A DNA stretch of 64,000 nt from the IMG/VR virus record IMGVR_UViG_3300046616_000314, positions 248,001-312,000 of that record. One strand, written 5' to 3'. Below are positions 29,001-58,943 of the stretch, piece after piece. Each line of letters starts with the position of its first letter. Within the stretch, counting starts at the first letter, position 1. The translations under genes and the position numbers were made by a program. The notes below the pieces were generated by a model. That model made no database searches, was not told where the DNA came from, and saw only the letters and a list, made by a program, of their open reading frames with translations.

Positions 29001-30368
29001 GTTAGCCGGTGTGCCCGAAATAACACCAGTTGCACCATTCAACGATAGACCGGAAGGCAGGGTGCTTGCGTTCAGAGCATACGAAATATCCGAGAAAGCT
29101 TCGGGATCGACTGCGCTTAGGGTAAAGGTATAAGGAACGCTCGAAATCGCATTCGACAAATTCAGAGTATTCCAAACCGGCGGCGTGTTCAGGACGGCGC
29201 GAATCTTCAGTGTACGCGGCGAAGGGTTGACACCATCAAATGCGTCAATAGTGAACGTATAGTCGGTAGATTCTTCGACTTGCGGTAGGAAGCCATAGAT
29301 AGCACCCGCGCTTGTGAGAGTGACACCATCAGGCAGGGTGCCCGAAGTCAGCGAGAACGTCAGTGGCAAACCGTTGGGATCATAGGCTTGCAATTGGGTA
29401 TTGATGTAATTGCCGCCGAGATCGGTAACGATAGTACCTTGCGAAATCCAAACAGCCGGAAGATTTTTATCAACGGCAATGGAGAAATCACGATTCAGAC
29501 CGCGCAGACCATCCGAGGCGCGCAGGGTGAAGCGACGTTCTTGGCTATAACCAACTTGGCTGACAACACCGTTGATCCAACCAGTGTTGGAGTTTAGGGA
29601 CATACCAACCGGCAATGAACCGCTAACCAACGAATAGCTAACAACATCACCGTTATCGGCATCCGTTGCCACGACAGCATAATTGGCAGTTGCGTATTCA
29701 ACCGCATGACCAAGCAAGCCCGCCGGGGTTTGCCATGTGGGCGGCGCGTTGTAATCGACGGTGAAGCTGAATGCACGGTTGAGGGAAAGAATTCCGTCCG
29801 ACGCAGCAATAGTGAAGAAGAAGGTAGTATCACCACCAACGCCCGAAAGAATACCGCTGATAACACCCGTGTCAGTGTTCAGGGTCAAACCATCAGGAAG
29901 CGAACCGGCTGCAACGCTATACGTGACCGGCTCACCCTCTGGATCGGTGGCGACCACGACGACGTTTGCAAAAGTACCATCGCGTTGAGTACCCAAGGTA
30001 CCAGCAGGAGTAGTCCAAACCGGAGCCGAGTTTTGAGTGACATCAAGCGAGAATTCGCGAGAAACCGAAGCCGTGTTGCTTGTGCAGGTAATCGTAAACG
30101 CATACGATTGAGCGACGTTATCTAGAACGCCCGACAAAGCACCGGTTTGATTATTGAAAGATAGACCATCGGGAATAGTACCCGAGGTAATGGAGAAGGT
30201 AGGCGCGGGACCGCTTACAACGCGGACCTTAACGGGTAGATAGACGGTCGATCCACCCAAGAAAGAACCCAACGATCCTTCGTCGGGGCTTAGCCAAGTC
30301 AAAAAGGTGTCATCTGATGCGTTTTGCTTAATCCAAACGAGCTTCAGACCGTCATACTTAATTCCCAT
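20031..30368 (-). CDS. Giant virion fibre/adhesin, 3445 aa: ~20 putative-Ig repeats and ~7 LamG/concanavalin-A-like modules
   Basis: Repeated PxWxTxxGxL...ATDPxG..(L/V)xY...GxLPxGLxL...GxISG units; repeated D(P)xxxNVVL...WHHxA...GYxDDxRxTxGxARYTxxFTPP units. Confidence 0.9.
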   Translation of the reverse strand: MGIKYDGLKLVWIKQNASDDTFLTWLSPDEGSLGSFLGGSTVYLPVKVRVVSGPAPTFSITSGTIPDGLSFNNQTGALSGVLDNVAQSYAFTITCTSNTASVSREFSLDVTQNSAPVWTTPAGTLGTQRDGTFANVVVVATDPEGEPVTYSVAAGSLPDGLTLNTDTGVISGILSGVGGDTTFFFTIAASDGILSLNRAFSFTVDYNAPPTWQTPAGLLGHAVEYATANYAVVATDADNGDVVSYSLVSGSLPVGMSLNSNTGWINGVVSQVGYSQERRFTLRASDGLRGLNRDFSIAVDKNLPAVWISQGTIVTDLGGNYINTQLQAYDPNGLPLTFSLTSGTLPDGVTLTSAGAIYGFLPQVEESTDYTFTIDAFDGVNPSPRTLKIRAVLNTPPVWNTLNLSNAISSVPYTFTLSAVDPEAFSDISYALNASTLPSGLSLNGATGVISGTPANYGSDFTFDLTIDASDGVLTTPRDFSLIVKENLDPIWNTASGLIANALAKTAISVQLEGYDPNGLPVSYSLESGTLPAGITLSAAGRISGTLPAVVSDTESEFTVNLFDGYNTVARTFSIINRVNAAPVWLTAAGSIGGGFEQTPFSYQLQGYDPDGYAVSYRLKYPGSLPFGLYLSGTGRISGTLPTVLQDAHPSFDVVLSDGSLDNYNEVERNFTIDVMFNSAPVWITGSNLGNIIENAAYSNQLSATGVGNGPMVYTLKSGALPAGWTLTKAGMLSGVSPAVASDTVFNFTINAFNGIKGADQSFTLTVQHNVPPVWVSNAGTIGSFYGNNTFEVQLVASDANGTPLTYTLVNSTTLPAGVTMSTSGRIAGKLAIVANATTYNFEVGASDGQSRVDRAFSVTAYSNQLPNWVTPSGSIFTGQKNKPVNTGVVATDLENSALTYALAVGSTLPTGLSLNSSTGRITGLAPNVSSNTNYPFTMTVTDGSAAPVEREFSIDVNVDTVPIWDTPAGTLGNTLSGYTFNFNFSAHDPEGLPVSYTMTSGTLPPNSTFNTSGAVHTVDINGTPVSDTDQTYTFTVTASDGTLTGPERTFSITVLKNLLPVWTTPAGSLGTQPEGSAFSATVHANDPEGLTITYTVTGGALPANVSLNNNTGQISGTLPPIATDTTYNFTITASDSRRSVPRSFSLVSTFNSPPAWTTASALGNELESSPYSKTLVATSNGDQVTYTSNNLPAFLTLNANGALTGMLPSVGSDTPYSFLATAHNPQGKTTDRTFTFSVINNIPPVWTTDAGLITALAGTTFNFPLVATDPNGTPLTYEHVSGTVPPGVTLDVGNSAAIYGTLPAVTEDTTYTIRVGASDGFTRVDRDFTLTSKLDTPAVWITNAGVILTQIEASYANTSVLAVDPNGNTVTYALDNGTSLPGALTLYSNGAIRGTLPAYSNGSSYNFDIAASDGHFSTGRTFTIALTQNQAPVWITNTVLADANESSQYSVTLLATDPDGDAVTYTMVNSPALPGTITLYSNGAVRGLAPSTNNDLGAEFTARATDVWGKWSEKTFNFTVKNDTSYLDQNSDKVTYLNHFDSMPDSEWANVVVFLPFNGDTINYAGYTNSGVGTVGTTAPKYGSGCLIAAENSSTAVVALPSSLDNKPFTIEFWLKRDRLGVNREGIVAVGGQGLPNTISMEFLTNNTIRILENTVGILVSNAAISDITDWHHVAMCSNGTAVTLFVDGVSQGAPANYYDGTLTSATTFVAGGTGLSNFNFLGKFDDIRMTVGTSRYSSNFTPSQNQMPLQDYYGTYTQQIGAVNTSSAVSKFGAASARMSNATAMVIPAAATGTNQNTTSGSFTVEGWFYLTAYPTAAESYNYLFYKTASVGEYFSARVSNATSKVEFFTYNGTSAVSIGNSAAAVPLNTWFNVSYSVSNSTVQTYVNGTRVSNAAITRATSTAGLNIGGTGASPRWTFRGYTDDVRLTDVARYSGASYVVPEFPYGNAPLWNTPAGALATTTEESTANVVVSATDPYNLGYALYEVTSGALPSTLTLNANTGAITGTLPYAAGPTGYAFGIQKTEGNGNKSSTRTFSVIPSVFPTPALALSWRLNRATGVTYTNLAPDVGTAAVTTYATGPTMVAAPGYSGDTAAYYNQTVTKMTTDTSSIRALVGDFTYEVWLNPLASPGATNTRFVFGIGSTAKFFVYYDPADNQWKNVYNNVTNSFGTLSLNTWHHLAVVKINSTIYLYADGVNVASSAVTTPALTYFDSDTMTIGNYNNGNAGTINNISNLLIRSMNIWSTVKYNTNFTPSWNSFVQPYWNSKSTTVYVANNAPIQVAYTAASFGNTTVSYGLANATTSGIGIDSTGALTGNAPATVGNASTVSFMATDSKSRTAPIRDITVIAETADPFYSNVVLLYQDDLVDATGKTITLFTATRSTSTYKYGTASLSFNGQVGTIARTTPSPRFSFGSNDWTFEAWVYTPGLTNTSNAGYSGCLWNLTDGSTVNTYNAMGFYLSGTATGVSGLGFQARDQSNSGAAMLNTAATFSEATFPLNTWHHVAFVRSGANMLHFLNGVNVGTTTNAFTGPTASMYFPPNGFIQFGGINVTSWTSPYNGFMDDARITNGNARYTTNFTPPGRLGGIIKNPIFTNTPSANTAVGYANSVIQKTIAATSVDTSAAITYTIASSTPPGVATINSTTGTMAVTFANTTAATANVTVRALADVFYTDRVINFQAVDSEILDTYYANVVAMMPMYGTVGTVPAELTGKSVTTTGTPVLSATQSKWGTQSFQTLANNYAFVTNTGGVLSSPGNFTVEGWFYKTAYATAYDAFFGSYTTTTANDTLMYTNLAGQLRFYVPTTDYIIGGGAGVTFPLNQWVHLAWSRVAGTSYFFMNGNLIGTSQVYVGTFCPSTQRLTVGGYEGQAASAGHVGFTNDFRYTKGVGRYTANFTPPTQPLPNKPNTAPQILLNNTTAYSNAVLNYSATFNANSFTLANEPTGLIANGSLLTGKMPFLSNTTVYNTTVSATNASSTSNAVVTYNVVVDPYLANTIVQMPMIGNPGAQLTERSSGKAITIQGGGGVLTQLVSKWGNQTTAGFSFGNFSYVGGIPQMTGAYTIEAWIHQIQPASAAPPNGLYSFYLSNNPNGSGPGYFIGVNASQQLVLRESAVDRIVGPVIPLNTWTHIALTRSGTLSTLWVNGVAVGSTNGTVSDWGQTSARIGLGGYEQVPANYGYNGAITDLRITNGVSRYSGTFTPPTQQFTLLPNDDPQYASVSVLVNGEGTLTDSTGNCTFTANGASISTVKKQFGNSSVSFPGTVTQTITQSQTNPTAGLDFGTGDFTMETWFNITALTAAGGGDYRSQLLHYSPPAATNVSTASVWSLHVGGPTASAGTAISFYSGSGSTFTFSPSASIPVNTWHHIAIVRQSGVFRCYLNGNLVGSQTSSFSFPSGTGSALLLGGNPVASYTANLNGYLDDIRITKGVARYVTPFTPPGQLGNF

Positions 30369-30410
30369 GAGATTTTTCCAGATGCTTGTGTCAAACGACA
30401 GTGTGTTTGA

Positions 30411-30418
30411 TATTTATG
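30411..30418 (-). promoter_or_regulatory. T4-like late promoter (CATAAATA)
   Basis: ~42 nt upstream of the giant gene's ATG. Confidence 0.6.
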
Positions 30419-30482
30419 CATCTGAAATTGGGTATATTCTGGATTTAACTCCGTTTCAGAAAATACGTCTACAGGTTGCTTA

Positions 30483-30857
30483 TTACTGTTTTTCAACAAC
30501 TTTTAGGTTGCCTCCGGTGCGTTCGAACAGCGTGCAAATCATATTGATGTCGCGCTTAGGAACGTCGCGAAGAACGGGACCGGTCGTTGACATTTCGATC
30601 ATATCCTTGGCTTCCTTGAGCCCCAAAGACAAATCGCCCGTATATACACGGGAAAGCTCACGAAGAATCTTGATAGCGTTGATCTTCTTGTCGGGGATCG
30701 AGCCCATATAGATGTCGTAAACCGCATCTTGCCTGGGAAGAGTGGGGTTGCCGTGTTCGGGAAAACCGAACTTGTTGTACAGTCGTAGATAGAGCGCATA
30801 CGCATCTTTTGTATCGAGACCATCAACAAACGTGTTCATATCGATATTAACGTGCAT
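30483..30857 (-). CDS. Ribosomal protein bL12 (L7/L12) C-terminal-domain-like protein
   Basis: YDIYMGSIPDKKINAIKILRE...LGLKEAKDMIE...VLRDVPKRD...FERTGG.LKV matches the bL12 CTD signature; AGAGGA RBS. Confidence 0.8.
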   Translation of the reverse strand: MHVNIDMNTFVDGLDTKDAYALYLRLYNKFGFPEHGNPTLPRQDAVYDIYMGSIPDKKINAIKILRELSRVYTGDLSLGLKEAKDMIEMSTTGPVLRDVPKRDINMICTLFERTGGNLKVVEKQ

Positions 30858-30892
30858 GGCTGTCCTCTCTAGCAATACCAACTTGTATAGCA

Positions 30893-30899
30893 ATAAATA
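30893..30899 (+). promoter_or_regulatory. T4-like late promoter, 5 nt before ATG
   Basis: ATAAATA-acact-ATG, no SD. Confidence 0.6.
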
Positions 30900-30904
30900 A
30901 CACT

Positions 30905-31720
30905 ATGTGCAACGATATTCGCAAACATCTTAATTTATTTGAGAACGTAGAGTTTTTGGAAGAGACCAAAGCCGCTCAATATAATCTCAAAGCTCGTTAC
31001 GACGAATTCAATCAGAAATTCTTCAACAACGAATTGCCTGAAATTCCCCTGAAATTCGGTACCCTAAAGAATTCCGGCGGCGTTGTGAAATTCAAGGTGA
31101 GCCGCGTCGGTCCCAAGCCAACTGCACGAACTATTCGTTATGGTCTAAACACACCCAATACGACGACTACGTTGATCCCCGGTACATTGACGATGGTTAT
31201 CTCGGATGCCTATCAGCGTAGTGAAGCCGAATTTGACGGTTTGTTGTTGCATGAAATGATCCATGTCTATTTTGCTCATACTGGAAAGTATTATGAGAGC
31301 CATGGTCCATTGTTCATGAAAATGTTACGAGAGTTATCGCAACGTAGTGGAATGGATATTCCTCTGACCGATGACACCAGCACGGCTTTACTCTCAAACG
31401 ATGCCGTCAAACCTGTTGGTGTTGTGATTGTTGAAAAGAAGTCGGGTGGTTTCTCGTTTGCGATGTATAATCCGAACGTTCTCACCACAAAAATTGAAGA
31501 ATTCAAAGCAGTATGGGAACGTTACAATCCAAGTTATGCAAAGGAAGTCCGTGCATACTTGGTGACGGGACCAGCTTGGACGAGAATGGCAATGGAAGTC
31601 CCGGTTGGGCGCCTTCCTAAGAAAGGTAATTTTTACCGGCTAGACGACGAAGACAAAGAAAAATTGTTCGCTGAAATAGCAGAGCATGGCGAAGTGGTCG
31701 CAGAACTTAAAATATCATAA
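30905..31720 (+). CDS. SprT-like zinc metallopeptidase
   Basis: YDEFNQKFFNNELP...LLLHEMIHVY...HGPLF. Confidence 0.85.
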   Translation: MCNDIRKHLNLFENVEFLEETKAAQYNLKARYDEFNQKFFNNELPEIPLKFGTLKNSGGVVKFKVSRVGPKPTARTIRYGLNTPNTTTTLIPGTLTMVISDAYQRSEAEFDGLLLHEMIHVYFAHTGKYYESHGPLFMKMLRELSQRSGMDIPLTDDTSTALLSNDAVKPVGVVIVEKKSGGFSFAMYNPNVLTTKIEEFKAVWERYNPSYAKEVRAYLVTGPAWTRMAMEVPVGRLPKKGNFYRLDDEDKEKLFAEIAEHGEVVAELKIS

Positions 31721-31750
31721 AAAAGAACCCGGCGGGCAACCACCGGGTTC
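31719..31750 (-). terminator. Intrinsic terminator (possibly bidirectional)
   Basis: GAACCCGG...CCGGGTTC followed by a minus-strand U-run. Confidence 0.8.
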
Positions 31751-31855
31751 TCTCAACAACAGAACAACCTTCAACATACTATGTCGAGACGTTGAAGACC
31801 AATGCCCAACCACCCGGTCAGTTCCAACGAGGTTGCCTACTGGGTCTCGTTGACC
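31725..31855 (-). ncRNA. Candidate ~130 nt sRNA
   Basis: TTGACA-N16-TAATCT (31888-31861), two hairpins, then a terminator; no credible ORF. Confidence 0.45.
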
Positions 31856-31889
31856 CGCGTAGATTACAAACCCGGTTTGGGTTGTCAAG

Positions 31890-34793
31890 CTACATGATCC
31901 AAATTTTTCCAGTAGCTTCCTCAAGCAACTCATCGAAGGCTTGCTTGACCTGATTCGGTAATTCCGACCAAAGGTGTTGAGCCGCAGCACGTCTCTCAGG
32001 ATCGGTTGTCAAATCCATGCCTTCGTCAAAGTGATCCGGCAACGGGTTCAGAGTAATTTTTCCAGTAATGATATACTGCGCAAAGCTTTCGTGAATCCAT
32101 TCAGATGCCGTGACCAGTTTATTCGACCGCGCCGAACGCATAGTACCCAAATAATGACCCATCATCTTAGTATAGATTTCATGGTGATCATGATAAATGA
32201 TATGTCCATACTGTGTATCTTGATCTGGCCACTCGTGATCATAGCCAATTTCCAAGATGTTATGGACAAAATTTTCAAAGACATAGGCTGCACTATAGGA
32301 CGACGCTAGCTTGTTACGTCCACTGATCAGAGTATGCGCCATTCGGTGAGCAATGATCCATGGGCTACGCAAGCTGATGTAGTCTTGATCCGACATATTG
32401 CTTCCGAGGATCATCGTAATATGGTTCGGATTTGCCTTGCTCAAATATTCATAGGCTTCCTTACCGAGTTTCTTTTGAACCCATTCCAAATCTACGTAAC
32501 CCTTTTGTGTCGTGGGATCATAGTCGGGATTGGTCGATTGCCAAAAATACATATCGAATGTGAATAGGGTTTTCATGAAAGCATTTTGGGCTTTCTTGAT
32601 TACGCCAGGATCACGCATGGCTTTCTTATCGACGGCTGACCAGTGTGGAGCTTCCATTTCGTAGCCAGTGAATTTCGACATCATTTCTTTTTCATTGGAG
32701 TCGAAATTCGGATCAACCTGCCAATCACCAATCGGGGCTTCGGTTAAACCAGCACCAAATTGATGAATGTCTTGTAATTTCCAAGTTTCGTGATCTTTAA
32801 AATATACTTGCCATCCCTTCAAGAATTTTTGAAGATACGGATTATTAATCAAATTATCCGATGATTGATACTTAGAATAAAATTCTAGTTCTAGATTACT
32901 TCCTCGCCAACCCAAGCTAATACAGTTTACCAATCCTTGAACATTAAAATGTGTTTTAAGATCATGATGAGTAGCATTGGCTGCATCCCATGCAATAATA
33001 CCATCTGGCATTACAAACATTCGAACCCAACCAAAATTTTGCAATAAACGTTCTAATTCGCCGTGAGAACCAATCTTATAAGTTTGCAAGTTAGAATTTT
33101 TCAGTTCCACTTTATCGAATGGAGCTTCGTCCAGAATTTCTTCCTCTATCGGTTCAGACGCCGTGATCAATTCTGTTAAGTTACCGAAGTATCTAATGAA
33201 TTTTGCTTGCTTGTCGGGAGATTCGATACCGTATTCGTTCTCGCCCATGACGATAACAAACAATCCAAGCGACGTTTTCCAAACTTCTCCTGCACCCGCC
33301 CAATCATTGCTTTCAAGCATTTCATCTGAATTCGTAGCTGCAATAAAGGGTTCCCAACGGTTGGACGCGGAGACATACAGCGCGTCACGCGCGTCCGCGT
33401 GCGAACTGTCCATGGCATCCCACATATAGATGTCCCCGGTGGAAGCATCATAGGCGCCCCGAATACCAGACGTTGCCGAATTCAACAGAGATTGGAATTC
33501 ACCACGGGTCGGATCGATGAAAAATTTTACGTTATTATTCCAAACCGAAGTCTCTTCGAAACGTTCGGTCAACTCGTCATCGGTCTCTTCATCTTCGTCA
33601 TCAAGCATCGTCCAATCGCCATAGATATCTTGGTCATAGTAATCGACTTCGATTTCTGGGAAATTGTTGACTAGCCAATCGCAACCGTGCGCCAATTCGG
33701 CGCCAACTTTATCACTATGCCACCAGATTGTGTTCAGTGAAGCATCTGTGACCGTGAGCATGATCGGTTGACCAAATTTGGTGCTATAAGCGTAAACTGG
33801 AATAGCATCCTTTGGAAGATTCAATTCCGCATGAACTGTGTTGTGGACAGCATCATAGGCAGACCATGCATAAAAATCTTTCCCAACGGCATAGCCGCGC
33901 GCCATCTGGTGTTTGCCTAAGCATTCCCGCCATTCTTTGGAATTGGGATTGATAAAGACGGTGACGATATGTTCTTTGCGCGGACCATATTGCGGCTTGA
34001 AAGCGTGGGCAAAGGCTTCCTTGACCGGCTCTGGATCGGAATGAACGGGTTGTTCGGGGAAATCCAGAACATCCGAGTAGTGCGCCTTGAAGTCTACGAC
34101 CGCGTGACCATTGCGACCAATGGCGTTGAATTTTACATTCGGTGGTAGCGTGATAGGCGCACGCCGACGCTTGCCCCAAGATGCTTTATACCCTTCGTTT
34201 CCGTAGACGGTTCCTGCCATGATATCGAACAAAAGTTCTTGGTCATCGCGCGTAGTTGATTGAATATTGCTGAAGGGCTCATCATCCCAATCGACCTGCG
34301 ACGGGTGCATTGTTACGTCTACGTGACGCATTTCTACGGAAATACTTGTGACATATTTCCAAATATTTGTCAGATCACCGATCAAAAACTCTTCGGATTC
34401 ATCCGACGAGACATCGCGCATACCAAGTGTACCCGCAATGGTGTCGATAGGTTCACGATAGGTTTGGTTACGCGGTTTGTTGCGATATGGCGCATAGCGC
34501 ATCGGAACAACCTTATGATTGTGCTTCAGACGTTGCAGGCTGAAGCCGATACGCCAAGCCTTGATCCCGCCTCTAGCGTAGGTATCTTGGATATCGAAGA
34601 ATGCATTGCGGGTAAGGCTGACGCCCTGGACAGTGGCATCATTGATCGTGTGGGGTGTTCGCCCGGTGATCGTCTGTGTCTTGAAAATCATCCGCAGAGC
34701 ATCAGCCGTAGTCCAGTGATAGACTTGTTGATCTGGTGCATTGACTAGTTCGTCAATACGGTCTTCGTTTAATAGGTCCATAAGGTCGCGCAT
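31890..34793 (-). CDS. Multi-domain late protein: ART-like N-domain, three internal repeats, zincin-like C-domain
   Basis: Start MRDLMDLLNE 5 nt after CATAAATA; VYHWT..GVSLTR..ESEE; repeats ending (A/M)WxAxxxxH; SPWIIAHRMAH...HESFAQY. Confidence 0.8.
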   Translation of the reverse strand: MRDLMDLLNEDRIDELVNAPDQQVYHWTTADALRMIFKTQTITGRTPHTINDATVQGVSLTRNAFFDIQDTYARGGIKAWRIGFSLQRLKHNHKVVPMRYAPYRNKPRNQTYREPIDTIAGTLGMRDVSSDESEEFLIGDLTNIWKYVTSISVEMRHVDVTMHPSQVDWDDEPFSNIQSTTRDDQELLFDIMAGTVYGNEGYKASWGKRRRAPITLPPNVKFNAIGRNGHAVVDFKAHYSDVLDFPEQPVHSDPEPVKEAFAHAFKPQYGPRKEHIVTVFINPNSKEWRECLGKHQMARGYAVGKDFYAWSAYDAVHNTVHAELNLPKDAIPVYAYSTKFGQPIMLTVTDASLNTIWWHSDKVGAELAHGCDWLVNNFPEIEVDYYDQDIYGDWTMLDDEDEETDDELTERFEETSVWNNNVKFFIDPTRGEFQSLLNSATSGIRGAYDASTGDIYMWDAMDSSHADARDALYVSASNRWEPFIAATNSDEMLESNDWAGAGEVWKTSLGLFVIVMGENEYGIESPDKQAKFIRYFGNLTELITASEPIEEEILDEAPFDKVELKNSNLQTYKIGSHGELERLLQNFGWVRMFVMPDGIIAWDAANATHHDLKTHFNVQGLVNCISLGWRGSNLELEFYSKYQSSDNLINNPYLQKFLKGWQVYFKDHETWKLQDIHQFGAGLTEAPIGDWQVDPNFDSNEKEMMSKFTGYEMEAPHWSAVDKKAMRDPGVIKKAQNAFMKTLFTFDMYFWQSTNPDYDPTTQKGYVDLEWVQKKLGKEAYEYLSKANPNHITMILGSNMSDQDYISLRSPWIIAHRMAHTLISGRNKLASSYSAAYVFENFVHNILEIGYDHEWPDQDTQYGHIIYHDHHEIYTKMMGHYLGTMRSARSNKLVTASEWIHESFAQYIITGKITLNPLPDHFDEGMDLTTDPERRAAAQHLWSELPNQVKQAFDELLEEATGKIWIM

Positions 34794-34861: not shown

Positions 34862-35389
34862 TTGACTTCTGATCGTCCTAAAATCCGAATTGGTCAACGC
34901 GATAAGCATCGTCATACGATGCCGATCTATAAGGATGATGTTCCGGTTGCAGAATTGTATTGGCGCATTGATCGCCAGTATCTACGCACGTGGCGTGGAG
35001 CCTTCGGTAAGAAATCAACCGAATACAAGACCACGCGCATCGGCAAGCTGACGATTTTCCCGATCTTGGGTCCGCTTGATATTTCGAACCTATCGGATGC
35101 TCATACCGCGAAGCGTTACGCTCGCATGGTGGTCGAATACGGCTATGAAAACCTGATTCGGTATGAATATAAGAAAGATACTTTCACCAAAAATGACATC
35201 GTGATCGGTTGGACGCATCCGACTTTTGTATCCGAAGTTAACGAATGGTGTAAAAAACACATGCGGGATACGCCCGTGCTCAATGCTATGAAAAAGCAAG
35301 TGTCGCCGCTCTACAAAACGACGTGCATTTACGAAGTGGTTTTCTCTTGCGAAGAGGATGCCCTGATGTTCAAGTTGAAGTGGCTATGA
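34862..35389 (+). CDS. Hypothetical protein, FKLKW family
   Basis: C-terminus VFSCEEDALMFKLKWL. Confidence 0.8.
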   Translation: MTSDRPKIRIGQRDKHRHTMPIYKDDVPVAELYWRIDRQYLRTWRGAFGKKSTEYKTTRIGKLTIFPILGPLDISNLSDAHTAKRYARMVVEYGYENLIRYEYKKDTFTKNDIVIGWTHPTFVSEVNEWCKKHMRDTPVLNAMKKQVSPLYKTTCIYEVVFSCEEDALMFKLKWL

Positions 35390-35859
35390 AAGTAACGTTC
35401 ACCAAGCTAAATCCCGATGGATACAACACCCGTTTCATCCTGTACGAGGGTGAACGGGTCGGGAAGGTCACGTTCTATCGCAATCGCAAGCGCGATGGAA
35501 ACAGGGACGTGTCGTTCACTGGGGGAGATTTTGTAAATTATCTTCACAAGTCTTCTATGGGTTTGTCTAAGTTCGACACGTGGATCGAAGTAAAGCGTTT
35601 CATCAAAGCATCGTACGCTTCAGGTGGTAAGCTACTCGTGATGCGATTTTCTCAAGACCCAAAGTGTCTTGTGAATATTGCTTTCATCAAACATAATCAT
35701 ACGGCGCATTTCTATGATCATGTGAAGGATTGGCTTGCCACGAAAGAAATCTCTGCTTATCTTGTCTCCCGGTCGCGGTTTGACGATCCGAAACACCAAT
35801 ATGATATTTTCTTTTCAAGCATGGATGATGCAACTATGTTCAAGATGAAGTGGTTGTAA
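35386..35859 (+). CDS. Hypothetical protein, FKLKW family
   Basis: MKVTFT...IFFSSMDDATMFKMKWL. Confidence 0.8.
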   Translation: MKVTFTKLNPDGYNTRFILYEGERVGKVTFYRNRKRDGNRDVSFTGGDFVNYLHKSSMGLSKFDTWIEVKRFIKASYASGGKLLVMRFSQDPKCLVNIAFIKHNHTAHFYDHVKDWLATKEISAYLVSRSRFDDPKHQYDIFFSSMDDATMFKMKWL

Positions 35860-36344
35860 TGACCAAAGTCACCTTCACTCGTTCCGATGACATCTATGCC
35901 GATGGTCAGCATGTGGGCTATTTTTCGTATAGCGCATCCCGTTGGTACATTAATAGTTTCAAGACTATGGGTGGTAGCAGGATTGCTCGATACGGGACCG
36001 AAGTTATTTGCACGGTATATTGCTCAGATGGTGAGAGCAAAGAATTGTCGCAGTTCTTTTCTAAGTCCCATGTAAAGCAATTCCTTCGGGTCTATTTTGG
36101 GGGAGGCAGGGGTATTCCGCCCATCAAAATCCACGTGGTGCGCGAGCATTCTTTGTTCCGCCATATCGATTTCTTTACCGACAAACCGCCGGTCATTCGC
36201 GATAGCTTGCTAGAATGGATCGGGCAAAATCTTAGTGCCACGCCGTTTTTCAAGCGAGTAGGATCGACTTCAACTGGTGGATACTGGAATATCTATTTCG
36301 CCAGTGAAGAAGATGCGATGATATTCAAGATGAAGTGGCTATAA
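35859..36344 (+). CDS. Hypothetical protein, FKLKW family
   Basis: MTKVTFT...IYFASEEDAMIFKMKWL. Confidence 0.8.
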   Translation: MTKVTFTRSDDIYADGQHVGYFSYSASRWYINSFKTMGGSRIARYGTEVICTVYCSDGESKELSQFFSKSHVKQFLRVYFGGGRGIPPIKIHVVREHSLFRHIDFFTDKPPVIRDSLLEWIGQNLSATPFFKRVGSTSTGGYWNIYFASEEDAMIFKMKWL

Positions 36345-36405
36345 CGCTTGACAATCTAATACACTGTGGTATCTATAGTGTATTATTTGATTGATCGGAG
36401 TCACC

Positions 36406-36612
36406 ATGAGCCGCGAACAAGAAATCCGCCAAGCCATTATCGCTCATATCCAAAAGAAGGGCTCGTGCCCTGCTTTTGAAAGCGTCGGTACGGATTGGAC
36501 CGAAGGTAATCCTATCTTCGAAGCGATGCTCGCTGAAGGTGTTCTGGTCGAGACCATTCGCATGAGCCCGAAGGGGCGTCGCATGACCGTCATTCGCCTG
36601 GGAGAAATCTAA
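36406..36612 (+). CDS. Hypothetical protein
   Basis: GGAG RBS; TTGACA promoter-like element upstream (~36349). Confidence 0.7.
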   Translation: MSREQEIRQAIIAHIQKKGSCPAFESVGTDWTEGNPIFEAMLAEGVLVETIRMSPKGRRMTVIRLGEI

Positions 36613-36827
36613 TGATTCAAGCTTGGGCTGCAAAGAAGAAAAATGGCGGGCTGTATCTGTATACGGTCGCCGGTTCGAAGAAGGTTGCGATGGCTCGTTT
36701 CATCGACAATTACACTCAGACTAAGATGCGCGACATGCGCGGTCTGCCCCTGGCGGACATTCAAGCCCGGTTCGACGCTTTGCCCTATGGGCAGACCGTG
36801 ACGCTGATCGACATTAAGGAACGCTAA
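36612..36827 (+). CDS. Hypothetical protein
   Basis: Coupled ORF, GGAG RBS. Confidence 0.7.
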   Translation: MIQAWAAKKKNGGLYLYTVAGSKKVAMARFIDNYTQTKMRDMRGLPLADIQARFDALPYGQTVTLIDIKER

Positions 36828-37088
36828 ATGGAAACGATGTTCAAAATCGGCGGCGGTCTGGTGATTGTCGTTATCGTTTCTGTCATCGTGGCAGGCGCCC
36901 AAGCGGCGGCAAAGCAAGACGCTATCGACGCAATCACGTCGCGTGGCTATCACGTTGCTTCGGTGACGCCGCGCGTGTTCGGCTGCATGAAGCATCGATA
37001 TCACTACGATATCGTGACCACCGAGGGTCCGAGCTACAAGGTGTGCGCTGGCAGCTTCATTGGTCCTTCGGTGGAACCGCTACGCTAG
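36828..37088 (+). CDS. Small secreted or membrane-anchored protein
   Basis: N-terminal hydrophobic segment, Cys pair. Confidence 0.7.
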   Translation: METMFKIGGGLVIVVIVSVIVAGAQAAAKQDAIDAITSRGYHVASVTPRVFGCMKHRYHYDIVTTEGPSYKVCAGSFIGPSVEPLR

Positions 37089-37420
37089 TTTTTCTTGTGG
37101 GAATCTTCCCACTCCATCACTAGTTCCATCGCAACTTCGTCGTTGCGAGCCTTGGAAAGACGACGATAGAAGTCCTTAGAAGCCTCTAAGTCATCGACAG
37201 GTCGAACACCACACCCCGCGCCGCAAGTGCCCTTAAAACCGCTTACAAGCCCTTCAGTGGCATAGGTGAACGTGTGGGTTCGGTTGTCACGGGTAATACC
37301 CGTGATGCGACTGGGCTCATAACGACAATCTTCGATGAGATCACCGATGGCGTAGTCTGATTTTACGGACTGCCACTTAAAGTTTTCGATGGCTTCCGCG
37401 AGAGGACGAAACATTTTCAT
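37085..37420 (-). CDS. Hypothetical protein
   Basis: GAGGA RBS; GDLIEDCRY motif. Confidence 0.7.
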   Translation of the reverse strand: MKMFRPLAEAIENFKWQSVKSDYAIGDLIEDCRYEPSRITGITRDNRTHTFTYATEGLVSGFKGTCGAGCGVRPVDDLEASKDFYRRLSKARNDEVAMELVMEWEDSHKKN

Positions 37421-37500
37421 GTAAGTCCTCTATCACAACACAACAAAGATGTCCACAGGCATGAAAAGGCGTTGACGCCTTTCTTGGATTTGGTATTATG

Positions 37501-37585
37501 ACGTTGGTCATTGCCCCCAATGACCAGACGCCCGGTTGTGTTGAGCCCCGCCCCCGTTGGGTTCCGCGACCGGGCGTCAAATATT
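37501..37585 (+). ncRNA. Candidate sRNA with two CCCC-loop hairpins
   Basis: 9 bp stem 37505-37526 with CCCC loop; long stem 37527-37578 topped by CCCC; TTGACG...TATTAT (37472-37499) upstream. Confidence 0.5.
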
Positions 37586-37618
37586 TTGATTTCCGAAAAT
37601 AATTTGGTATGATGCCTG

Positions 37619-38242
37619 ATGTATTTTTTGTCCATCCCCGGTGATCTCATCGACCGAAATGAAGAATGTACTTTCTCAGATTTGCTGGGATTGACCTTCG
37701 TCACGGCTGAGTCTTCAGAAAAGCGCGTTGATTTCGTCGCGGATTTCGGCGCGCGAATCACCATGTATCACGAACAAAACTGTTGTGAGAGCGTGTACGT
37801 CGAAGATATTAACGGCGATCTAAACGATTTGGTGGGAAGCCCGATTCTGCGCGCTGATGAGCGGACAAACGTCAAGAAGTACGGGCGGGACGTAAACGAA
37901 GACGGCGACCCTATTGGCGACCCGCCTCCCGAAAACGATGACGACTATCTTCCCGAACTTCAGCAATGGACGTTCTATGGTCTTTCGACCATCAAGGGCT
38001 CCGTTGATTTCCGGTTCTATGGATCGTCAAACGGATATTATTCAGTGAGCGTCACCACCCGAATGGTCCGTTTCACCCCAGAAGTCATGCAATTCTGTAA
38101 GGAAAAGCAAATCACCGCTTGGCTGATGGGCAACCATCCCAACGACGAAGATTTCGACCATGACTTTGTTGCGACATTCCAAAACGAAGAAGACCTTCTA
38201 GTCTTCAAGCTAAAGTTTGGTGGGGACTTGTGTAAGGTGTAG
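37619..38242 (+). CDS. Conserved phage domain (CCE...GSSNGYYS) fused to an FKLKF-type tail
   Basis: MYHEQNCCESVYVEDINGDLNDLVGSPIL, WTFY, YGSSNGYYS; ends FQNEEDLLVFKLKFGG. Confidence 0.8.
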   Translation: MYFLSIPGDLIDRNEECTFSDLLGLTFVTAESSEKRVDFVADFGARITMYHEQNCCESVYVEDINGDLNDLVGSPILRADERTNVKKYGRDVNEDGDPIGDPPPENDDDYLPELQQWTFYGLSTIKGSVDFRFYGSSNGYYSVSVTTRMVRFTPEVMQFCKEKQITAWLMGNHPNDEDFDHDFVATFQNEEDLLVFKLKFGGDLCKV

Positions 38243-38488
38243 CCATGTGCTATGCCTTACACTTCGCATGATCGTCCCTGGACGATGAAGACGTAAGTGG
38301 TAGAGTCTGAACGACCCAAAGGGAATTAACCTTTGCAGATCATCCACCCCCTGATGATGGTTATCTAAGGGGGATTTTTGGCGGTGATTGAGGGAGCCGA
38401 GATAACTGGCATCGCCACCATGCGAATTAATTTGCTATCATTAACCAAATTTGGTAAGAATGGTTCATAAATTTTATGAGCCATTTTT

Positions 38489-39121
38489 ATGCCGATCAAG
38501 AAGGCGACCAAGCGCGTCGCATCTACCGACAGCACGTTCAAGTATGCCCTGCGCGTAATCGAGACGGGTAAATTCTGGACCGGGAATGTTCGTTCCCCAA
38601 ACCGCTACGCCCGTAGTCGGTATGCTGTCGCCAGCCTTCCCCGCTGGGTTCCGCAATACCAAGAAATTCCGATGCTCTGGAACAACATCGCCACGGCGAA
38701 ACGCAAGTGGTCGATTCACGAAACCGAACGCCAGTGTGGTATCGCTGTTCCAGAGTTGGAAATCGTCACCTTCGAAATGAAGACGGTTGAGACGGGCGTT
38801 CAGGTTCCCGACGTAGACCCCATTACCGTTCGCGTGACCCGCCTGCATCGGTTTGTGGGATCGGCGGTTGGTACCGCGTTTGAACGCCTAGTGGACTCTC
38901 GCATTGATGGCATGGAATTTAATTATGCAGTCAAGCGTCGCGGCAAAACCAAAGACCTCATCGACGGTAGACTGTCGGATTCATTCTCATTTAGCACCGT
39001 AACCTTCATCAAAACCGAAGAAGATTTGATGCACGCCAAGTTGCTTCTGGGTTCGAACTTTGCTACAGCTTATGATCTGAACAACATCAAGGTCGGGGAT
39101 AATGACGGAGAAGAAGAGTAA
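38489..39121 (+). CDS. Hypothetical protein
   Basis: 210 aa ORF; FIKTEEDLMHAKL tail. Confidence 0.75.
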   Translation: MPIKKATKRVASTDSTFKYALRVIETGKFWTGNVRSPNRYARSRYAVASLPRWVPQYQEIPMLWNNIATAKRKWSIHETERQCGIAVPELEIVTFEMKTVETGVQVPDVDPITVRVTRLHRFVGSAVGTAFERLVDSRIDGMEFNYAVKRRGKTKDLIDGRLSDSFSFSTVTFIKTEEDLMHAKLLLGSNFATAYDLNNIKVGDNDGEEE

Positions 39122-39344
39122 GCCGCTGGGTCTGCACAAAGAACGCGAGCTAGCTAAACATTTGAGAAAACAATTGGCTTCGATTCCAAAGATGCCGATG
39201 GCTGTCACCGAAATGACGCCGAATGAATACGCACTCTTCGAATCACTAGCTAAAGTGATCGGCACGCTTCAATTCGTTTCCGATTATATTGATCCCGTCA
39301 CTCGGGAATCACGCCGTTTGGTTGAACATTCAAAGATTACTTGA
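39102..39344 (+). CDS. Hypothetical protein
   Basis: Overlapping ORF in a co-directional run. Confidence 0.6.
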   Translation: MTEKKSKPLGLHKERELAKHLRKQLASIPKMPMAVTEMTPNEYALFESLAKVIGTLQFVSDYIDPVTRESRRLVEHSKIT

Positions 39345-39374
39345 CAATACTCTGGGTCATGCTAAATTATAAAC

Positions 39375-39713
39375 ATGACCCAGAACCCTTATGACCGCAA
39401 TAATTTCCCCGGCAAGTTCAAGACCAATTATATTGGTTTTGCTGACGGATTTTATTGCCTGCGTCTGAGCATGGATGCTGGTGAAGGTCTCGACGCCCTC
39501 ATGTGGCAGATGGAAGTCAGCGAATGGCTTTTCAACACGCTGGGCGGCAAGTGGCACATGGGGAACGATTTCCCCTACAAGGACCATCCGCAAATCAACC
39601 TGTCGGCTTGGTCGAAGAACGACTATTTCGTTCTGATCGAAAAATTTCATGAAGTCGTGCTGTTCGAAGATGCGTTCGTCGTCTCGGGTATTACCCCGTC
39701 GCAGTTGGTCTAA
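39375..39713 (+). CDS. Hypothetical protein
   Basis: TTGACA-N17-TAAATT promoter-like element upstream. Confidence 0.7.
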   Translation: MTQNPYDRNNFPGKFKTNYIGFADGFYCLRLSMDAGEGLDALMWQMEVSEWLFNTLGGKWHMGNDFPYKDHPQINLSAWSKNDYFVLIEKFHEVVLFEDAFVVSGITPSQLV

Positions 39714-40000
39714 TGGCATATTGGCACGGTAAAGGCTATCGAATGACTTCGCACGATGAGCGGAAGTTGCTGCTTCAGCAATATCCGTTTGAGGGGTCGT
39801 GCCTACGGAAGAGTAAGGAAAATGATCTTCATTTCCTGGCGGGAACCGATCTTCTCGCCATCGTAGATTATTTGTCAGACCAAATGCCAAAAACAACGGA
39901 AGCAACTTGGACTTATGACAAACTCAAGGATTGTCTGCGGTTCTCTACTGCTAAATTTCGTGACGAAACCGAGACCATCTTTAAATTGAAATTTGGTTGA
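39713..40000 (+). CDS. Hypothetical protein, FKLK(F/W) family
   Basis: Ends ETETIFKLKFG. Confidence 0.7.
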   Translation: MAYWHGKGYRMTSHDERKLLLQQYPFEGSCLRKSKENDLHFLAGTDLLAIVDYLSDQMPKTTEATWTYDKLKDCLRFSTAKFRDETETIFKLKFG

Positions 40001-57942: not shown

Positions 57943-57944
57943 TT

Positions 57945-58286
57945 TTATTCCTCAATATCAACGGGAGTGATATGCCAAACCGAACGGCTCTGGGGTTTCA
58001 CTCCGGTACGCATGGCGTCCATCACTTGACTGATATTACTGATTCCGCCAGTAATTTCAACAAAGCCAACGCCGACGATGTTTAGGGCAAGCGCATCCGC
58101 ACCCGCCGTGATGTTTTGAACCTTGTCATTCTTAAGAATGATTTCAGTACAATCGACCAAGTTCTTGATGTTCTTGATCGCTTTCACGTGTCCAATTTTC
58201 AGAGCCACCTTGGCTGCATCATCTTCATTGTGGGCGAAGATGCTGCAACCAGAGTTGGCAGAATTGGTGATGCGGTAGATACGCAT
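57945..58286 (-). CDS. Hypothetical protein inside the NAD operon
   Basis: 113 aa ORF abutting pncA and nadE. Confidence 0.7.
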   Translation of the reverse strand: MRIYRITNSANSGCSIFAHNEDDAAKVALKIGHVKAIKNIKNLVDCTEIILKNDKVQNITAGADALALNIVGVGFVEITGGISNISQVMDAMRTGVKPQSRSVWHITPVDIEE

Positions 58287-58931
58287 TTAGTCCTCGTGCG
58301 GATAGGCGTGAGCGAAGGTCAGGTTTTCGTTACCCGGAAACTCTTCCAAGATAACTTGCTGCATGTCGCGCACGATGCCCTTGGTCAGGTCAGCCATGAC
58401 GATCACCTTGAAGCCACGCTTCAGGAAACCTTCAATCGCCCAAAAGACGCAGAAGTCGGCAGCAAAACCGGTGATGATGATCGTATCGACGCCTTGCGCC
58501 TTCAGATCGGCGAAGAATTCATCGCGATCATAGTACGAGTTGGTCAGCGCGAGACGCAGATCGCGCAGATACAACTTGTCTTCTTCCCACATATTGAAGA
58601 CGCCCTTTTCCAGGGCATAGACCGGGATGGCGAAATTGATCAACGCCGGATTGATGACGTTCTCCCAACCGGGTGTGCCCTTTTCACAGTGCAGATTGAA
58701 GCCTGGGGCGCCCACTTCCGGGTTGCCGAGATTTTCCGGCGAGCCGATGAAGGTTTCTTCGGTGTGCGTATCGAAGGTGTTCAGAACACCCGCGATTTCG
58801 TCAGGGTTCAAGCTGGCGTTCCAACGCAGCAGCTTGGAAACCACGGCTTCAGCACCTTCCACCGGCAGGGCAAAGCCCTTGAAGATGAAATCGGCTTGGG
58901 TATCAACGTTGACCACAAATTTGTTTTTCAT
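58287..58931 (-). CDS. pncA: Nicotinamidase (isochorismatase family)
   Basis: VDTQADF, DTH, HC..GTPG, KG, GFAADFCV catalytic D-K-C and metal ligands; operon context. Confidence 0.9.
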   Translation of the reverse strand: MKNKFVVNVDTQADFIFKGFALPVEGAEAVVSKLLRWNASLNPDEIAGVLNTFDTHTEETFIGSPENLGNPEVGAPGFNLHCEKGTPGWENVINPALINFAIPVYALEKGVFNMWEEDKLYLRDLRLALTNSYYDRDEFFADLKAQGVDTIIITGFAADFCVFWAIEGFLKRGFKVIVMADLTKGIVRDMQQVILEEFPGNENLTFAHAYPHED

Positions 58932-58943
58932 AATATTTTTTCC

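What the first reader, a model, noticed from the sequence alone, without database searches (positions are those of the whole stretch)
37472..37590. Candidate sRNA with two CCCC-capped hairpins
Seen: after TTGACG...TGG-TATTAT there is an ~85 nt unit. Hairpin 1 is a perfect 9 bp stem (37505-37526) with a CCCC loop. Hairpin 2 is a 12 bp basal stem (37527-37538/37567-37578) plus an upper stem whose apex is again CCCC (37551-37554). A separate promoter-like element (TTGATT...TATGAT) serves the next gene. Known: C-rich loop sRNAs (alphaproteobacterial cuckoo/CcsR types, staphylococcal RNAIII) pair with G-rich ribosome-binding sites. Inference: a phage anti-SD sRNA that may silence SD-led host or early mRNAs, complementary to the leaderless late genes. 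Caveat: the -35 lies inside an inverted repeat (AAAGGCG-TTGA-CGCCTTT) that could instead be a minus-strand terminator.
Basis: partly seen in the sequence, partly recalled or inferred. Interest (0 to 1): 0.6.

Follow-up and report, generated by a model that had tools for sequence, protein, structure and literature searches.

The report
Orphan twin-hairpin RNA candidate, giant phage
A 561-kb uncultivated phage carries, between two divergent genes, a good host-type promoter followed at once by two very stable adjacent RNA hairpins; this is probably a short structured RNA, but nothing supports the proposed job of blocking ribosome-binding sites, and no relatives or expression data exist to test it.

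Summary
P1 (TTGACG-16-TGgTATTAT, 37472-37499) is followed by a perfect 9-bp hairpin with a CCCC loop (37505-37526). A 52-nt hairpin abuts it (37527-37578), with a second CCCC at its tip. Next comes a second promoter, P2 (37586-37613). P2 places the ATG of the next gene 5 nt after its -10, as in about 30 other leaderless units of this phage. The fold is far beyond chance (-50.9 kcal/mol, z -7.2). It favours the + strand (four G-U pairs; minus strand -42.4). It is unique in the genome. P1 and P2 rank 217 and 163 of 1.1 million positions under the phage's own promoter model.

Three things weaken the sRNA reading. The 3' end is not a canonical terminator, because AAAUAUUUU follows the stem. No relative of the element was found in any collection. 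No RNA run exists. So a stand-alone sRNA and a structured 5' leader of the downstream gene cannot be told apart.

The anti-Shine-Dalgarno idea is not supported. The phage's SD is GGAGA. The RNA has no CUCC, CCUC or UCCC. Only two 4-nt loops are exposed. GGGG near start codons occurs at chance frequency.

Verdict: a real, orphan, promoter-proximal structured-RNA candidate of modest interest.

The parts
37085..37420 (-). Left flanking gene P0001 (111 aa), transcribed away from the element
   Evidence: It is an open frame with a positive coding score of 0.164 per codon. GAGGA lies 5 nt before the ATG. It is an orphan in 5.8 billion proteins. The Atlas model has pTM 0.71, with weak Tudor / CarD-RID-like rows.
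37465..37482 (.). Inverted repeat AAAGGCG-TTGA-CGCCTTT overlapping the -35 of P1
   Evidence: Seen. It folds at -8.7 kcal/mol on + and -10 on -. It is unique in the genome. It could be a weak bidirectional terminator or an operator; this is undecided.
37472..37499 (+). Promoter P1: TTGACG, 16-nt spacer, TGgTATTAT
   Evidence: It matches 10 of 12 consensus positions and has an extended -10. It ranks 217 of 1.12 million positions under the phage's own promoter model; the 16-nt spacer is the preferred one. It shares ATTTGGTATnATG with P2. The predicted start is about 37505-37507 (inference).
37505..37526 (+). Hairpin 1: perfect 9-bp stem with a CCCC loop, at the predicted 5' end of the RNA
   Evidence: (z -5.5). 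It is the most stable first-30-nt structure among 200 intergenic promoter-like sites.
37527..37578 (+). Hairpin 2: 14-bp base, UU bulge, 6-bp upper stem, 2-bp cap, CCCC apex (37552-55). It abuts hairpin 1 with no spacer.
   Evidence: It folds at -37.6 kcal/mol on + against -27.9 on -. Four G-U pairs become A-C mismatches on the minus strand.
37579..37592 (+). A/U-rich tail AAATATTTTGATTT: possible weak termination zone, overlapping the -35 of P2
   Evidence: Its tail score is -2.0, at the weak end of 40 intergenic hairpins of this phage. The phage's usual terminators carry TTTTT directly on the stem.
37586..37613 (+). Promoter P2: TTGATT, 16-nt spacer, TGgTATGAT, ending 5 nt before ATG 37619
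   Evidence: It ranks 163. It has the same geometry as about 30 other promoter-ATG units that lack an SD.
37619..38242 (+). Right flanking gene P0002 (207 aa; DUF7448 / phrog_2650), probably leaderless
   Evidence: Pfam E 1.9e-23 and PHROG E 3.3e-37. Coding score 0.177 per codon. No close relative; the best is 54% identical over its aligned part. The fold gave no clear PDB match.
37436..37444 (.). CAACACAAC, perfectly complementary to GTTGTGTTG at 37535-37543 in the 5' arm of hairpin 2
   Evidence: These are the only two intergenic copies of this 9-mer in the genome. The chance of such a match in the gap is about 0.07. Unexplained.

Best explanation
A short non-coding RNA is made from the + strand by the host sigma-70 RNA polymerase at P1.

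5' end: transcription is predicted to start at about 37505-37507, so the RNA begins directly with hairpin 1. Hairpin 2 follows with no spacer. Together they form a rigid twin-hairpin body of about 74 nt.

3' end: it would arise in the all-A/U stretch 37579-37592. It could come from inefficient termination, or from trimming of read-through transcripts back to the stable stem. Product length is about 75-90 nt.

Independence: the next gene does not need P1. It has its own promoter, P2, placed for a leaderless mRNA.

Mode of action: almost every base is paired. The RNA most likely acts through its shape and its two exposed C4 loops, for example by binding or decoying a protein or an RNA polymerase surface. 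Long antisense pairing is unlikely.

What is shown: the structure, its strand bias, and the fit of both promoters to the phage's consensus.

What is inferred: that P1 fires, where the RNA ends, and what it does.
For: - Structure: -50.9 kcal/mol, z -7.2, 0 of 200 shuffles as good.
- Strand bias: the + strand beats the - strand by 8.5 kcal/mol. All of this comes from hairpin 2 and its four G-U pairs.
- Promoters: P1 fits the phage's own promoter model (rank 217 of 1.12 million; preferred 16-nt spacer; T-rich TGGTA motif). Other 'orphan' promoters of this model sit in front of tRNA genes, so the phage does drive RNA genes this way.
- Position of hairpin 1: it starts exactly at the predicted 5' end. 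It gives the most stable first 30 nt among 200 intergenic promoter-like sites (-11.6 against a median of -1.75 kcal/mol).
- Fold density: the P1-to-ATG stretch reaches -0.47 kcal/mol per nt, against -0.09 to -0.33 for 18 other long leaders.
- P2 and its ATG fit the leaderless design seen at about 30 other genes. P1-P2 is the only tandem of more than 100 nt upstream of such a unit.
- No coding signal over the element: ORF34 scores +0.004 per codon and the minus-strand ORFs -0.22 and -0.43, against 0.16-0.18 for the flanking genes.
- The gap is divergent, so no gene needs a terminator here.
Against: - No expression data. The only runs that hold this DNA are DNA runs. The contigs of the near-identical freshwater relative do not cover 37400-37605.
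- No relative of the element exists in any collection searched, so covariation cannot be tested.
- The 3' end is atypical. AAA follows the stem and the U run starts 6 nt later. The phage's own terminators carry U runs on the stem. P1 transcripts may therefore simply run into P0002.
- Only 38% of the phage's genes have an SD-like word. The region before ATG 37619 is A/U-rich and unpaired. A P1 read-through mRNA could therefore still be translated.
- No Rfam family matches.
Confidence: 0.4

Rival explanations
1. The element is a cis-acting 5' leader, not a separate gene. P1 is a second, upstream promoter of P0002 and the genes beyond it. The twin hairpin is the 5' end of that mRNA.

It could work in three ways:
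- As a 5'-terminal stabiliser against 5'-end-dependent decay.
- As a leaky attenuator that sets how much P1 transcription enters P0002 and passes over P2.
- As a put-like RNA that stays on the polymerase and makes it resistant to pausing and termination.
For: - The tail after hairpin 2 is a poor terminator by this phage's own standard, so read-through is likely.
- The stretch before ATG 37619 is A/U-rich and unpaired. 62% of the phage's genes lack an SD-like word, so SD-independent initiation on a leadered mRNA is plausible.
- The HK022 put RNAs are about 70 nt long, consist of two stem-loops, need no protein, and putL lies just downstream of its promoter (PMC9378689). This is the same gross layout as here.
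- Terminator-like hairpins lie downstream of P0002.
Against: - P0002 already has a promoter placed for a leaderless mRNA.
- Nearly every gene in this region has its own promoter, so long-range antitermination is not obviously needed.
- The covariance model of the element finds nothing in the HK022 early region.
- No other long leader in the genome is comparably structured.
Confidence: 0.3
2. There is no RNA function. The palindromes act at the DNA level, or the promoter-like and hairpin sequences have no function. Possible DNA-level roles are operators for a regulator of the divergent promoters, or another protein-binding or recombination site.
For: - Hairpin 1 is a perfect 9+9 palindrome with a 4-bp centre, sitting at about +1 to +22 of P1.
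- The repeat at 37465-82 covers the -35 of P1 and lies next to the only candidate P0001 promoter. These are classic operator positions.
- A 9-nt inverted repeat (37436-44 / 37535-43) brackets P1.
- There is no conservation or expression evidence for an RNA.
Against: - None of these palindromes or half-sites recurs elsewhere in the 561-kb genome.
- Hairpin 2 is imperfect in a strand-specific way: its four G-U pairs cost 9.7 kcal/mol on the other strand. This is expected for RNA, not for a DNA site.
- P1 fits the phage's promoter consensus beyond the two hexamers.
Confidence: 0.15
3. One reading: a trans-acting anti-Shine-Dalgarno sRNA. Its C-rich loops would pair with G-rich ribosome-binding sites of host or early phage mRNAs and spare the leaderless genes.
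For: - There are two CCCC loops on one small RNA.
- The phage does have both SD-led and leaderless genes.
- C-rich sRNAs that pair with SD regions are known from the CcsR/cuckoo and RsaE/RoxS families (from my own knowledge).
Against: - The phage SD is GGAGA or GGAG, and its A cannot pair with C.
- The RNA contains no CUCC, CCUC, CCUCC or UCCC.
- The loops are 4 nt long on rigid stems, and all other bases have an unpaired probability near 0.
- GGGG in start regions is at chance level (41 of 979), and GGGGG occurs in only 4.
- No Rfam hit to any C-rich sRNA family at E <= 10.
- No Hfq gene in the phage.
- The host is unknown, so host targets could not be tested.
Confidence: 0.05
4. The element acts on the minus strand. 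It would be part of the 5' UTR of P0001 (with GGGG loops), or a terminator for leftward transcripts. Or it encodes the 34-aa peptide of ORF 37498-37602, whose in-frame TTG at 37504 lies 4 nt after the -10 of P1.
For: - P0001 has no convincing sigma-70 promoter close to it. The best candidate is TGGACA-17-TGaTAGAGG (rank 468), with a non-consensus last base. Its transcript could therefore start further right.
- ORF34 spans the element exactly.
Against: - No promoter-like site lies on the minus strand to the right of the element (best score -3.3).
- The minus-strand fold is 8.5 kcal/mol weaker and has no U tail.
- ORF34 has a coding score of +0.004 per codon, which is about the 6th percentile of small called genes. 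It would be buried in a -50 kcal/mol structure. Every leaderless unit with a strong promoter starts with ATG, not TTG; only two weak-promoter cases use GTG.
- The minus-strand ORFs score -0.22 and -0.43 per codon.
Confidence: 0.07

Closest known systems
HK022 put RNAs (putL, putR): cis-acting, polymerase-binding antiterminator RNAs
   Same: Both are about 70 nt, consist of two stem-loops, and sit at the very start of a transcript from a host-polymerase promoter of a phage. Neither needs an associated protein gene (PMC9378689).
   Different: - No sequence or structure-model similarity to the HK022 early region.
- put stem I is irregular and forms a triplex; hairpin 1 here is a plain perfect 9-bp helix.
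- There is no -10-like pause signal in the first 30 nt (read from the sequence).
- The downstream genes here have their own promoters.
Short promoter-proximal phage RNAs ended by a terminator (lambda 6S RNA from pR'-tR', lambda OOP RNA, P22 sar RNA); recalled from my own knowledge
   Same: A strong host-type promoter in a phage regulatory gap gives a short structured RNA of under 200 nt (OOP and sar about 70-80 nt; lambda 6S is longer) ahead of, or beside, protein genes.
   Different: - OOP and sar are antisense to a neighbouring mRNA. No overlapping minus-strand transcript is predicted here.
- Lambda 6S ends at an efficient terminator, and a Q protein acts at its promoter. The tail here is a weak terminator, and no Q-like logic is evident.
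C-rich-loop sRNAs that pair with SD regions (CcsR/cuckoo of alphaproteobacteria; RsaE/RoxS of Bacillota)
   Same: A small RNA that shows runs of C in hairpin loops.
   Different: - No Rfam match.
- The loops are bare CCCC tetraloops, not the longer CCUCC- or UCCC-bearing loops.
- There are no tandem copies.
- The motif does not complement the phage's GGAGA SD.
Type III toxin-antitoxin loci (ToxIN layout) and the P1/P7 c4 RNA layout
   Same: The order is promoter, then small structured RNA, then a leaky stop, then a protein gene on the same strand.
   Different: - There are no tandem RNA repeats.
- P0002 is DUF7448, not a known toxin fold.
- No C4 Rfam match.
- No G-rich site complementary to the loops lies near the start of P0002.

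Membership tests
CcsR / cuckoo C-rich sRNAs | Match to the family covariance model | tested here: not met
   There was no Rfam hit at gathering score in the window. There was also none at E <= 10 in 37380-37680.
CcsR / cuckoo C-rich sRNAs | Loops carrying an anti-SD word (CCUCC-type) and several tandem copies | tested here: not met
   The RNA has no CUCC, CCUC or CCUCC. It is single-copy in the genome.
RsaE / RoxS C-rich sRNAs | UCCC motifs in unpaired regions, and a match to the family model | tested here: not met
   There is no UCCC in the RNA and no Rfam hit.
HK022 put RNA | About 70 nt, two adjacent stem-loops, directly downstream of a host-type phage promoter | tested here: met
   The twin hairpin is 74 nt long and starts at the predicted +1 of P1. 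The put features are taken from PMC9378689.
HK022 put RNA | Sequence and structure kinship with putL / putR | tested here: not met
   Model R1 finds nothing better than E 1.2 (8 bits) in HK022 bases 24000-32000. I take this stretch to hold the early region; the record does not mark pL, pR or the put sites.
HK022 put RNA | Suppresses pausing and termination through the polymerase beta' zinc-binding domain | not testable with these tools
   This needs in vitro transcription or reporter assays.
Stand-alone bacterial or phage sRNA gene (promoter plus intrinsic terminator) | Own promoter | tested here: met
   P1 ranks 217 of 1.12 million positions under the phage's promoter model. This is consensus only; firing is not shown.
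Stand-alone bacterial or phage sRNA gene (promoter plus intrinsic terminator) | Intrinsic terminator: GC-rich stem directly followed by a U run | tested here: inconclusive
   The stem is strong (-37.6 kcal/mol). But AAAUAUUUU follows it, and the tail score of -2.0 is at the weak end of the phage's own hairpins.
Stand-alone bacterial or phage sRNA gene (promoter plus intrinsic terminator) | A discrete transcript is detected | not testable with these tools
   No RNA run holds this DNA.
AgvB (prophage anti-GcvB sRNA) | Match to the family model | tested here: not met
   The hit at 37430-37485 (+) scores 14.2 bits against a gathering score of 56, with E 3.2. No promoter lies before it.
RNA anti-CRISPR (solitary CRISPR repeat mimic) | The hairpin matches the repeat of a CRISPR array in some genome | tested here: not met
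   The 18-mer core of hairpin 1 gives 28 single matches in 185,579 genomes, and none lies in an array. Four of them are coding sequence in Acidithiobacillus. Exact matches only were searched.
P1/P7 C4 antisense RNA | Family model match, and loop-complementary target sites downstream in the same transcript | tested here: not met
   There is no Rfam hit. No GGGG-type site lies near the start of P0002.

The most novel reading that the evidence does not exclude
A giant phage makes, early and from a host promoter, a protein-free twin-hairpin RNA of a new family. This RNA acts directly on the host's gene-expression machinery. It could work like the put RNA, riding on the polymerase. Or it could be a rigid decoy whose twin C4 loops capture a host factor or a defence sensor. 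Either way it would sit in front of a set of leaderless genes.
Probability: 0.1. Interest if true: 0.65.

Novelty: new member of a known kind. Interest (0 to 1): 0.3.

Why it matters
Non-coding RNAs of virulent phages are little known, and those of huge uncultivated phages are hardly known at all. In the phiKZ RNA map, the one predicted 75-nt sRNA could not be confirmed by Northern blot (PMC8244752). A verified RNA gene with a host-type promoter in a 561-kb phage would add one such case. It would also give a handle on how this phage combines SD-led, SD-less and leaderless genes. As it stands, this is a single-sequence prediction: clean in structure, with no evidence of conservation or expression. 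The specific and more exciting claim of an anti-SD silencer does not fit the sequence.

Tried and rejected
- **Known RNA families.** Rfam at gathering score over the window gave none. Rfam at E <= 10 over 37380-37680 gave only chance rows: MIR6450, AgvB and two snoRNAs. ARAGORN found no tRNA or tmRNA in the window.
- **Relatives of the element.**
  - megablast and blastn against 50,697 phages: none.
  - An exact 30-mer in IMG/VR: none.
  - Two gapped patterns in JGI metagenomes: none.
  - An 18-mer in 185,579 genomes: only chance or coding hits.
  - Covariance model R1: it finds only itself in its own genome. It finds nothing in four DUF7448 loci or in HK022.
- **Relatives of the phage, for synteny.**
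  - P0001 is an orphan.
  - P0002 has only distant relatives, 54% identity or less.
  - Two large neighbouring proteins have no relatives in IMG/VR.
- **Sequencing reads.**
  - The only full holder is the likely source sample, a rhizosphere metagenome.
  - Two freshwater rows of equal size, probably one data set filed twice, hold pieces of a phage 97.7-100% identical to this one, but none covers the element.
  - There is no RNA run.
  - Read laying was given 5,001 letters.
- **Target search.** Duplex energies of the RNA against 979 phage start regions do not differ from shuffled RNAs (means -22.1 against -21 to -23). I do not rely on this crude test.
- **Operator idea.** No second copy of any palindrome or half-site exists in the genome.
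- **Cis-antisense idea.** No minus-strand promoter lies to the right of the element.
- **Coding ideas.** ORF34, ORF67 and ORF115 have zero or negative coding scores.
- **P0002 function.** The AlphaFold model (pLDDT 76.6) has no PDB match at E <= 0.001. It gives no link to RNA.
- **Technical.** They were replaced by an intergenic-only scan.
- **Genetic code.** No code other than table 11 was used.

Full report
**Context.** The window is bases 248,001-312,000 of a 561,116-bp IMG/VR virus record (97% complete by CheckV).
- GC content is about 48%.
- The DNA comes from a rhizosphere metagenome. A phage 97.7-100% identical over the pieces laid is present at about 2x depth in a freshwater metagenome.
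- The genome carries 36 tRNA genes, none of them in the window.
- The window holds a class II aminoacyl-tRNA synthetase, NAD synthase, NAPRTase, a NUDIX protein, an ART-PolyVal protein and a 3,445-aa open frame.
- No sigma-70 region 2, no RNA polymerase beta-like subunit and no Hfq were found in six-frame searches.

**Where the finding lies.** It lies in a 198-nt gap (37421-37618) between two genes that point away from each other.
- P0001 (37085-37420, minus strand, 111 aa) has a positive coding score. It has no relative among 5.8 billion proteins.
- P0002 (37619-38242, plus strand, 207 aa) is a DUF7448 / phrog_2650 protein.
- Because the gap is divergent, no gene needs a terminator there.

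All elements are at the stated coordinates.
- Bases 37500-37595 of the + strand fold into two directly abutting hairpins at -50.9 kcal/mol.
- The dinucleotide-shuffle mean is -26.5 kcal/mol (z -7.2; none of 200 shuffles is as good).
- Taken alone, the hairpins give z -5.5 and z -6.2.
- The ensemble is rigid. Only the two CCCC loops, the UU bulge, three further single bases (A37526, C37549, U37558) and the 3' tail have an appreciable unpaired probability.
- In an intergenic-only fold scan of the whole genome, the element is among the five most stable of 1,910 windows.
- The others are mostly canonical terminators between co-directional or convergent genes.

**Strand.**
- The reverse complement folds 8.5 kcal/mol worse.
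- The whole difference lies in hairpin 2: -37.6 against -27.9 kcal/mol.
- Its four G-U pairs become A-C mismatches on the other strand.
- Hairpin 1 is a perfect palindrome and says nothing about strand.
- Four of four transition-type imperfections favouring one strand is suggestive, not decisive (one-sided p about 0.06; my own arithmetic). It does agree with the direction of P1.

**Promoters.**
- The phage has a clear sigma-70-type promoter family, TTGACA-16/17-TGnTAnnnT, with a T-rich run before the TG.
- I built a position-weight model from 88 such promoters upstream of other genes, leaving this locus out.
- Under it, P1 ranks 217 and P2 ranks 163 of 1,122,232 positions. Both have the preferred 16-nt spacer.
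- Of 333 sites above the same score, 118 lie within 60 nt of a gene start.
- Another 31 end 4-8 nt before an ATG that has no SD. These are leaderless units, and they include P2 with P0002 and the window genes at 39375, 40021 and 42411.
- Some 'orphan' promoter sites precede tRNA genes. The phage therefore uses this promoter type for RNA genes too.
- P1 stands out among 200 intergenic promoter-like sites. The first 30 transcribed nt are the most structured of all (-11.6 kcal/mol against a median of -1.75), and the hairpin begins exactly at the predicted 5' end.
- P1-P2 is the only tandem of more than 100 nt upstream of a leaderless unit.
- The P1-to-ATG stretch has a fold density of -0.47 kcal/mol per nt. 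Eighteen other long leaders have -0.09 to -0.33.

**The weak point: the 3' end.**
- This phage's terminators are GC-rich stems with a tetraloop and a run of T directly on the stem, often with a matching A run upstream.
- Hairpin 2 is followed by AAATATTTTGATTT. Its tail score (-2.0) is at the weak end of 40 intergenic hairpins.
- The nine bases after the stem are all A or U, so some termination is conceivable (inference). Substantial read-through into P2 and P0002 must still be expected.
- Only 38% of the phage's genes have an SD-like word, and the stretch before ATG 37619 is A/U-rich and unpaired. A P1 read-through mRNA could therefore be translated.
- For these reasons I cannot separate 'stand-alone sRNA' from 'structured 5' leader'.

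**Coding and minus-strand alternatives.**
- The 34-aa frame that spans the element scores +0.004 per codon.
- The minus-strand frames score -0.22 and -0.43 per codon. The two flanking genes score 0.16-0.18.
- All leaderless units with a strong promoter start with ATG, so the in-frame TTG 4 nt after the -10 of P1 is an unlikely start.
- On the minus strand, the only sigma-70-like site is TGGACA-17-TGaTAGAGG, which ends 6 nt before the P0001 ATG. It ranks 468 and has a non-consensus last base.
- Nothing promoter-like lies to the right of the element. A cis-antisense relation to P0001 is therefore not supported.
- The inverted repeat at 37465-82 is a weak hairpin (-8.7 or -10 kcal/mol). It covers the -35 of P1 and is unique in the genome. 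It may be a weak bidirectional terminator for the upstream + operon, or an operator. I could not decide between these.

**The anti-SD reading fails on sequence.**
- The most frequent 5-mer before start codons is GGAGA (80 genes). GGAG occurs in 143 start regions.
- GGGG occurs in 41 of 979, about the number expected by chance. GGGGG occurs in 4.
- The RNA has no CUCC, CCUC, UCUCC, CCUCC or UCCC.
- Its unpaired C residues are two tetraloops plus the single C37549.
- No Rfam family matches at gathering score. At E <= 10 only chance-level rows appear.
- Nothing shows that the leaderless genes are 'late'. They use the same promoter type as the SD-led genes.

**Relatives.** None were found, so covariation could not be tested. 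Three kinds of search were made.
- Direct searches for the element: nucleotide searches against phages, exact and gapped patterns in IMG/VR and in JGI metagenomes, and an 18-mer scan of 185,579 genomes.
- Searches with a single-sequence covariance model over the phage's own genome, the DUF7448 loci, the 28 pattern hits and the HK022 early region.
- Synteny searches with four neighbouring proteins.

The 18-mer hits are chance. Four of them are the codons for VVIAPND in a conserved Acidithiobacillus gene. None lies in a repeat array, so a solitary CRISPR-repeat mimic is not supported.

**Closest analogies.**
- In layout, the element most resembles HK022 putL. That RNA is about 70 nt, has two stem-loops, sits right after a host-type promoter and needs no protein (PMC9378689).
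- It also resembles short promoter-proximal phage RNAs such as lambda 6S, OOP and P22 sar (from my own knowledge).
- It is not demonstrably a member of any of these families.

**Verdict.**
- The structure and both promoters are real features.
- The most likely reading is a P1-driven short structured RNA (0.4).
- A cis-acting leader is a close second (0.3).
- DNA-level or no function comes next (0.15).
- A minus-strand or coding role (0.07) and the anti-SD mechanism (0.05) are unlikely.
- Interest is modest until a transcript or a diverged copy is found.

Noticed in passing
window 37613/37619, 39375, 40021, 42411; about 30 places genome-wide: Many genes have a sigma-70-type promoter whose -10 hexamer ends 5-6 nt before an ATG, with no SD. 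These are a set of predicted leaderless mRNAs in a giant phage. Only 38% of the called genes have an SD-like word.
   Followed up: partly
window 37436-37444 and 37535-37543: There is a perfect 9-nt inverted repeat, CAACACAAC / GTTGTGTTG. One arm lies in front of P0001 and the other in the 5' arm of hairpin 2. These are the only two intergenic copies among 10 in the genome. The chance of such a match in the gap is about 0.07. Unexplained.
   Followed up: partly
window 37430-37485 (+): CUAUCACAACACAACAA plus the small hairpin gives a chance-level match to the prophage anti-GcvB sRNA AgvB (14 bits, E 3.2). No promoter precedes it. On the minus strand the same bases give a GU-rich stretch just upstream of the P0001 SD.
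   Followed up: partly
window 37085-37420 (-): P0001 is an orphan protein with a confident Atlas model (pTM 0.71). Its nearest structural rows include Tudor-like, polymerase-interacting domains (CarD/TRCF RID, PcrA/UvrD tudor; TM 0.43-0.49 by query). This is a lead only.
   Followed up: partly
window 37417-37420: The minus-strand ORF 37417-37764 overlaps the P0001 start as ATGA, which looks like translational coupling. But its coding score is -0.22 per codon, and it runs antisense to the conserved N-terminus of P0002. It is spurious.
   Followed up: yes
own genome 119,760-119,996 (-), locus L008; also orphan promoters at 544,269(-), 543,864(-), 328,104(-) and 34,146(-): Strong promoters of the phage's consensus are not followed by a called gene. 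The one at 119,996 precedes about 200 nt of structured RNA (-77 kcal/mol over 237 nt) that ends in a terminator-like hairpin. No Rfam match at E <= 0.01. These are further non-coding RNA candidates outside the window.
   Followed up: partly
whole genome; window 35000-40000: The source appears to be a rhizosphere metagenome. Pieces 97.7-100% identical occur at about 2x depth in a freshwater metagenome that is probably filed twice. The genome has 36 tRNA genes.
   Followed up: partly
window 11350-12789, 16204-17469, 20031-30368, 45578-46777, 54019-55320, 56149-61375: Auxiliary genes in the window are:
- a HAD / NTP-transferase fusion;
- a class II aminoacyl-tRNA synthetase;
- a 3,445-aa open frame;
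- an ART-PolyVal ADP-ribosyltransferase domain;
- a GNAT acetyltransferase;
- an NAD cluster of NAD synthase, NAPRTase and NUDIX.
   Followed up: no
window 37602-37614 and 37488-37500; own genome 8,627-8,644 and 252,898-252,914: A promoter subclass shares the spacer word AAATAATTT(G/C)GTATGAT. It includes P2 and two other promoters. P1 shares the last 13 nt.
   Followed up: partly
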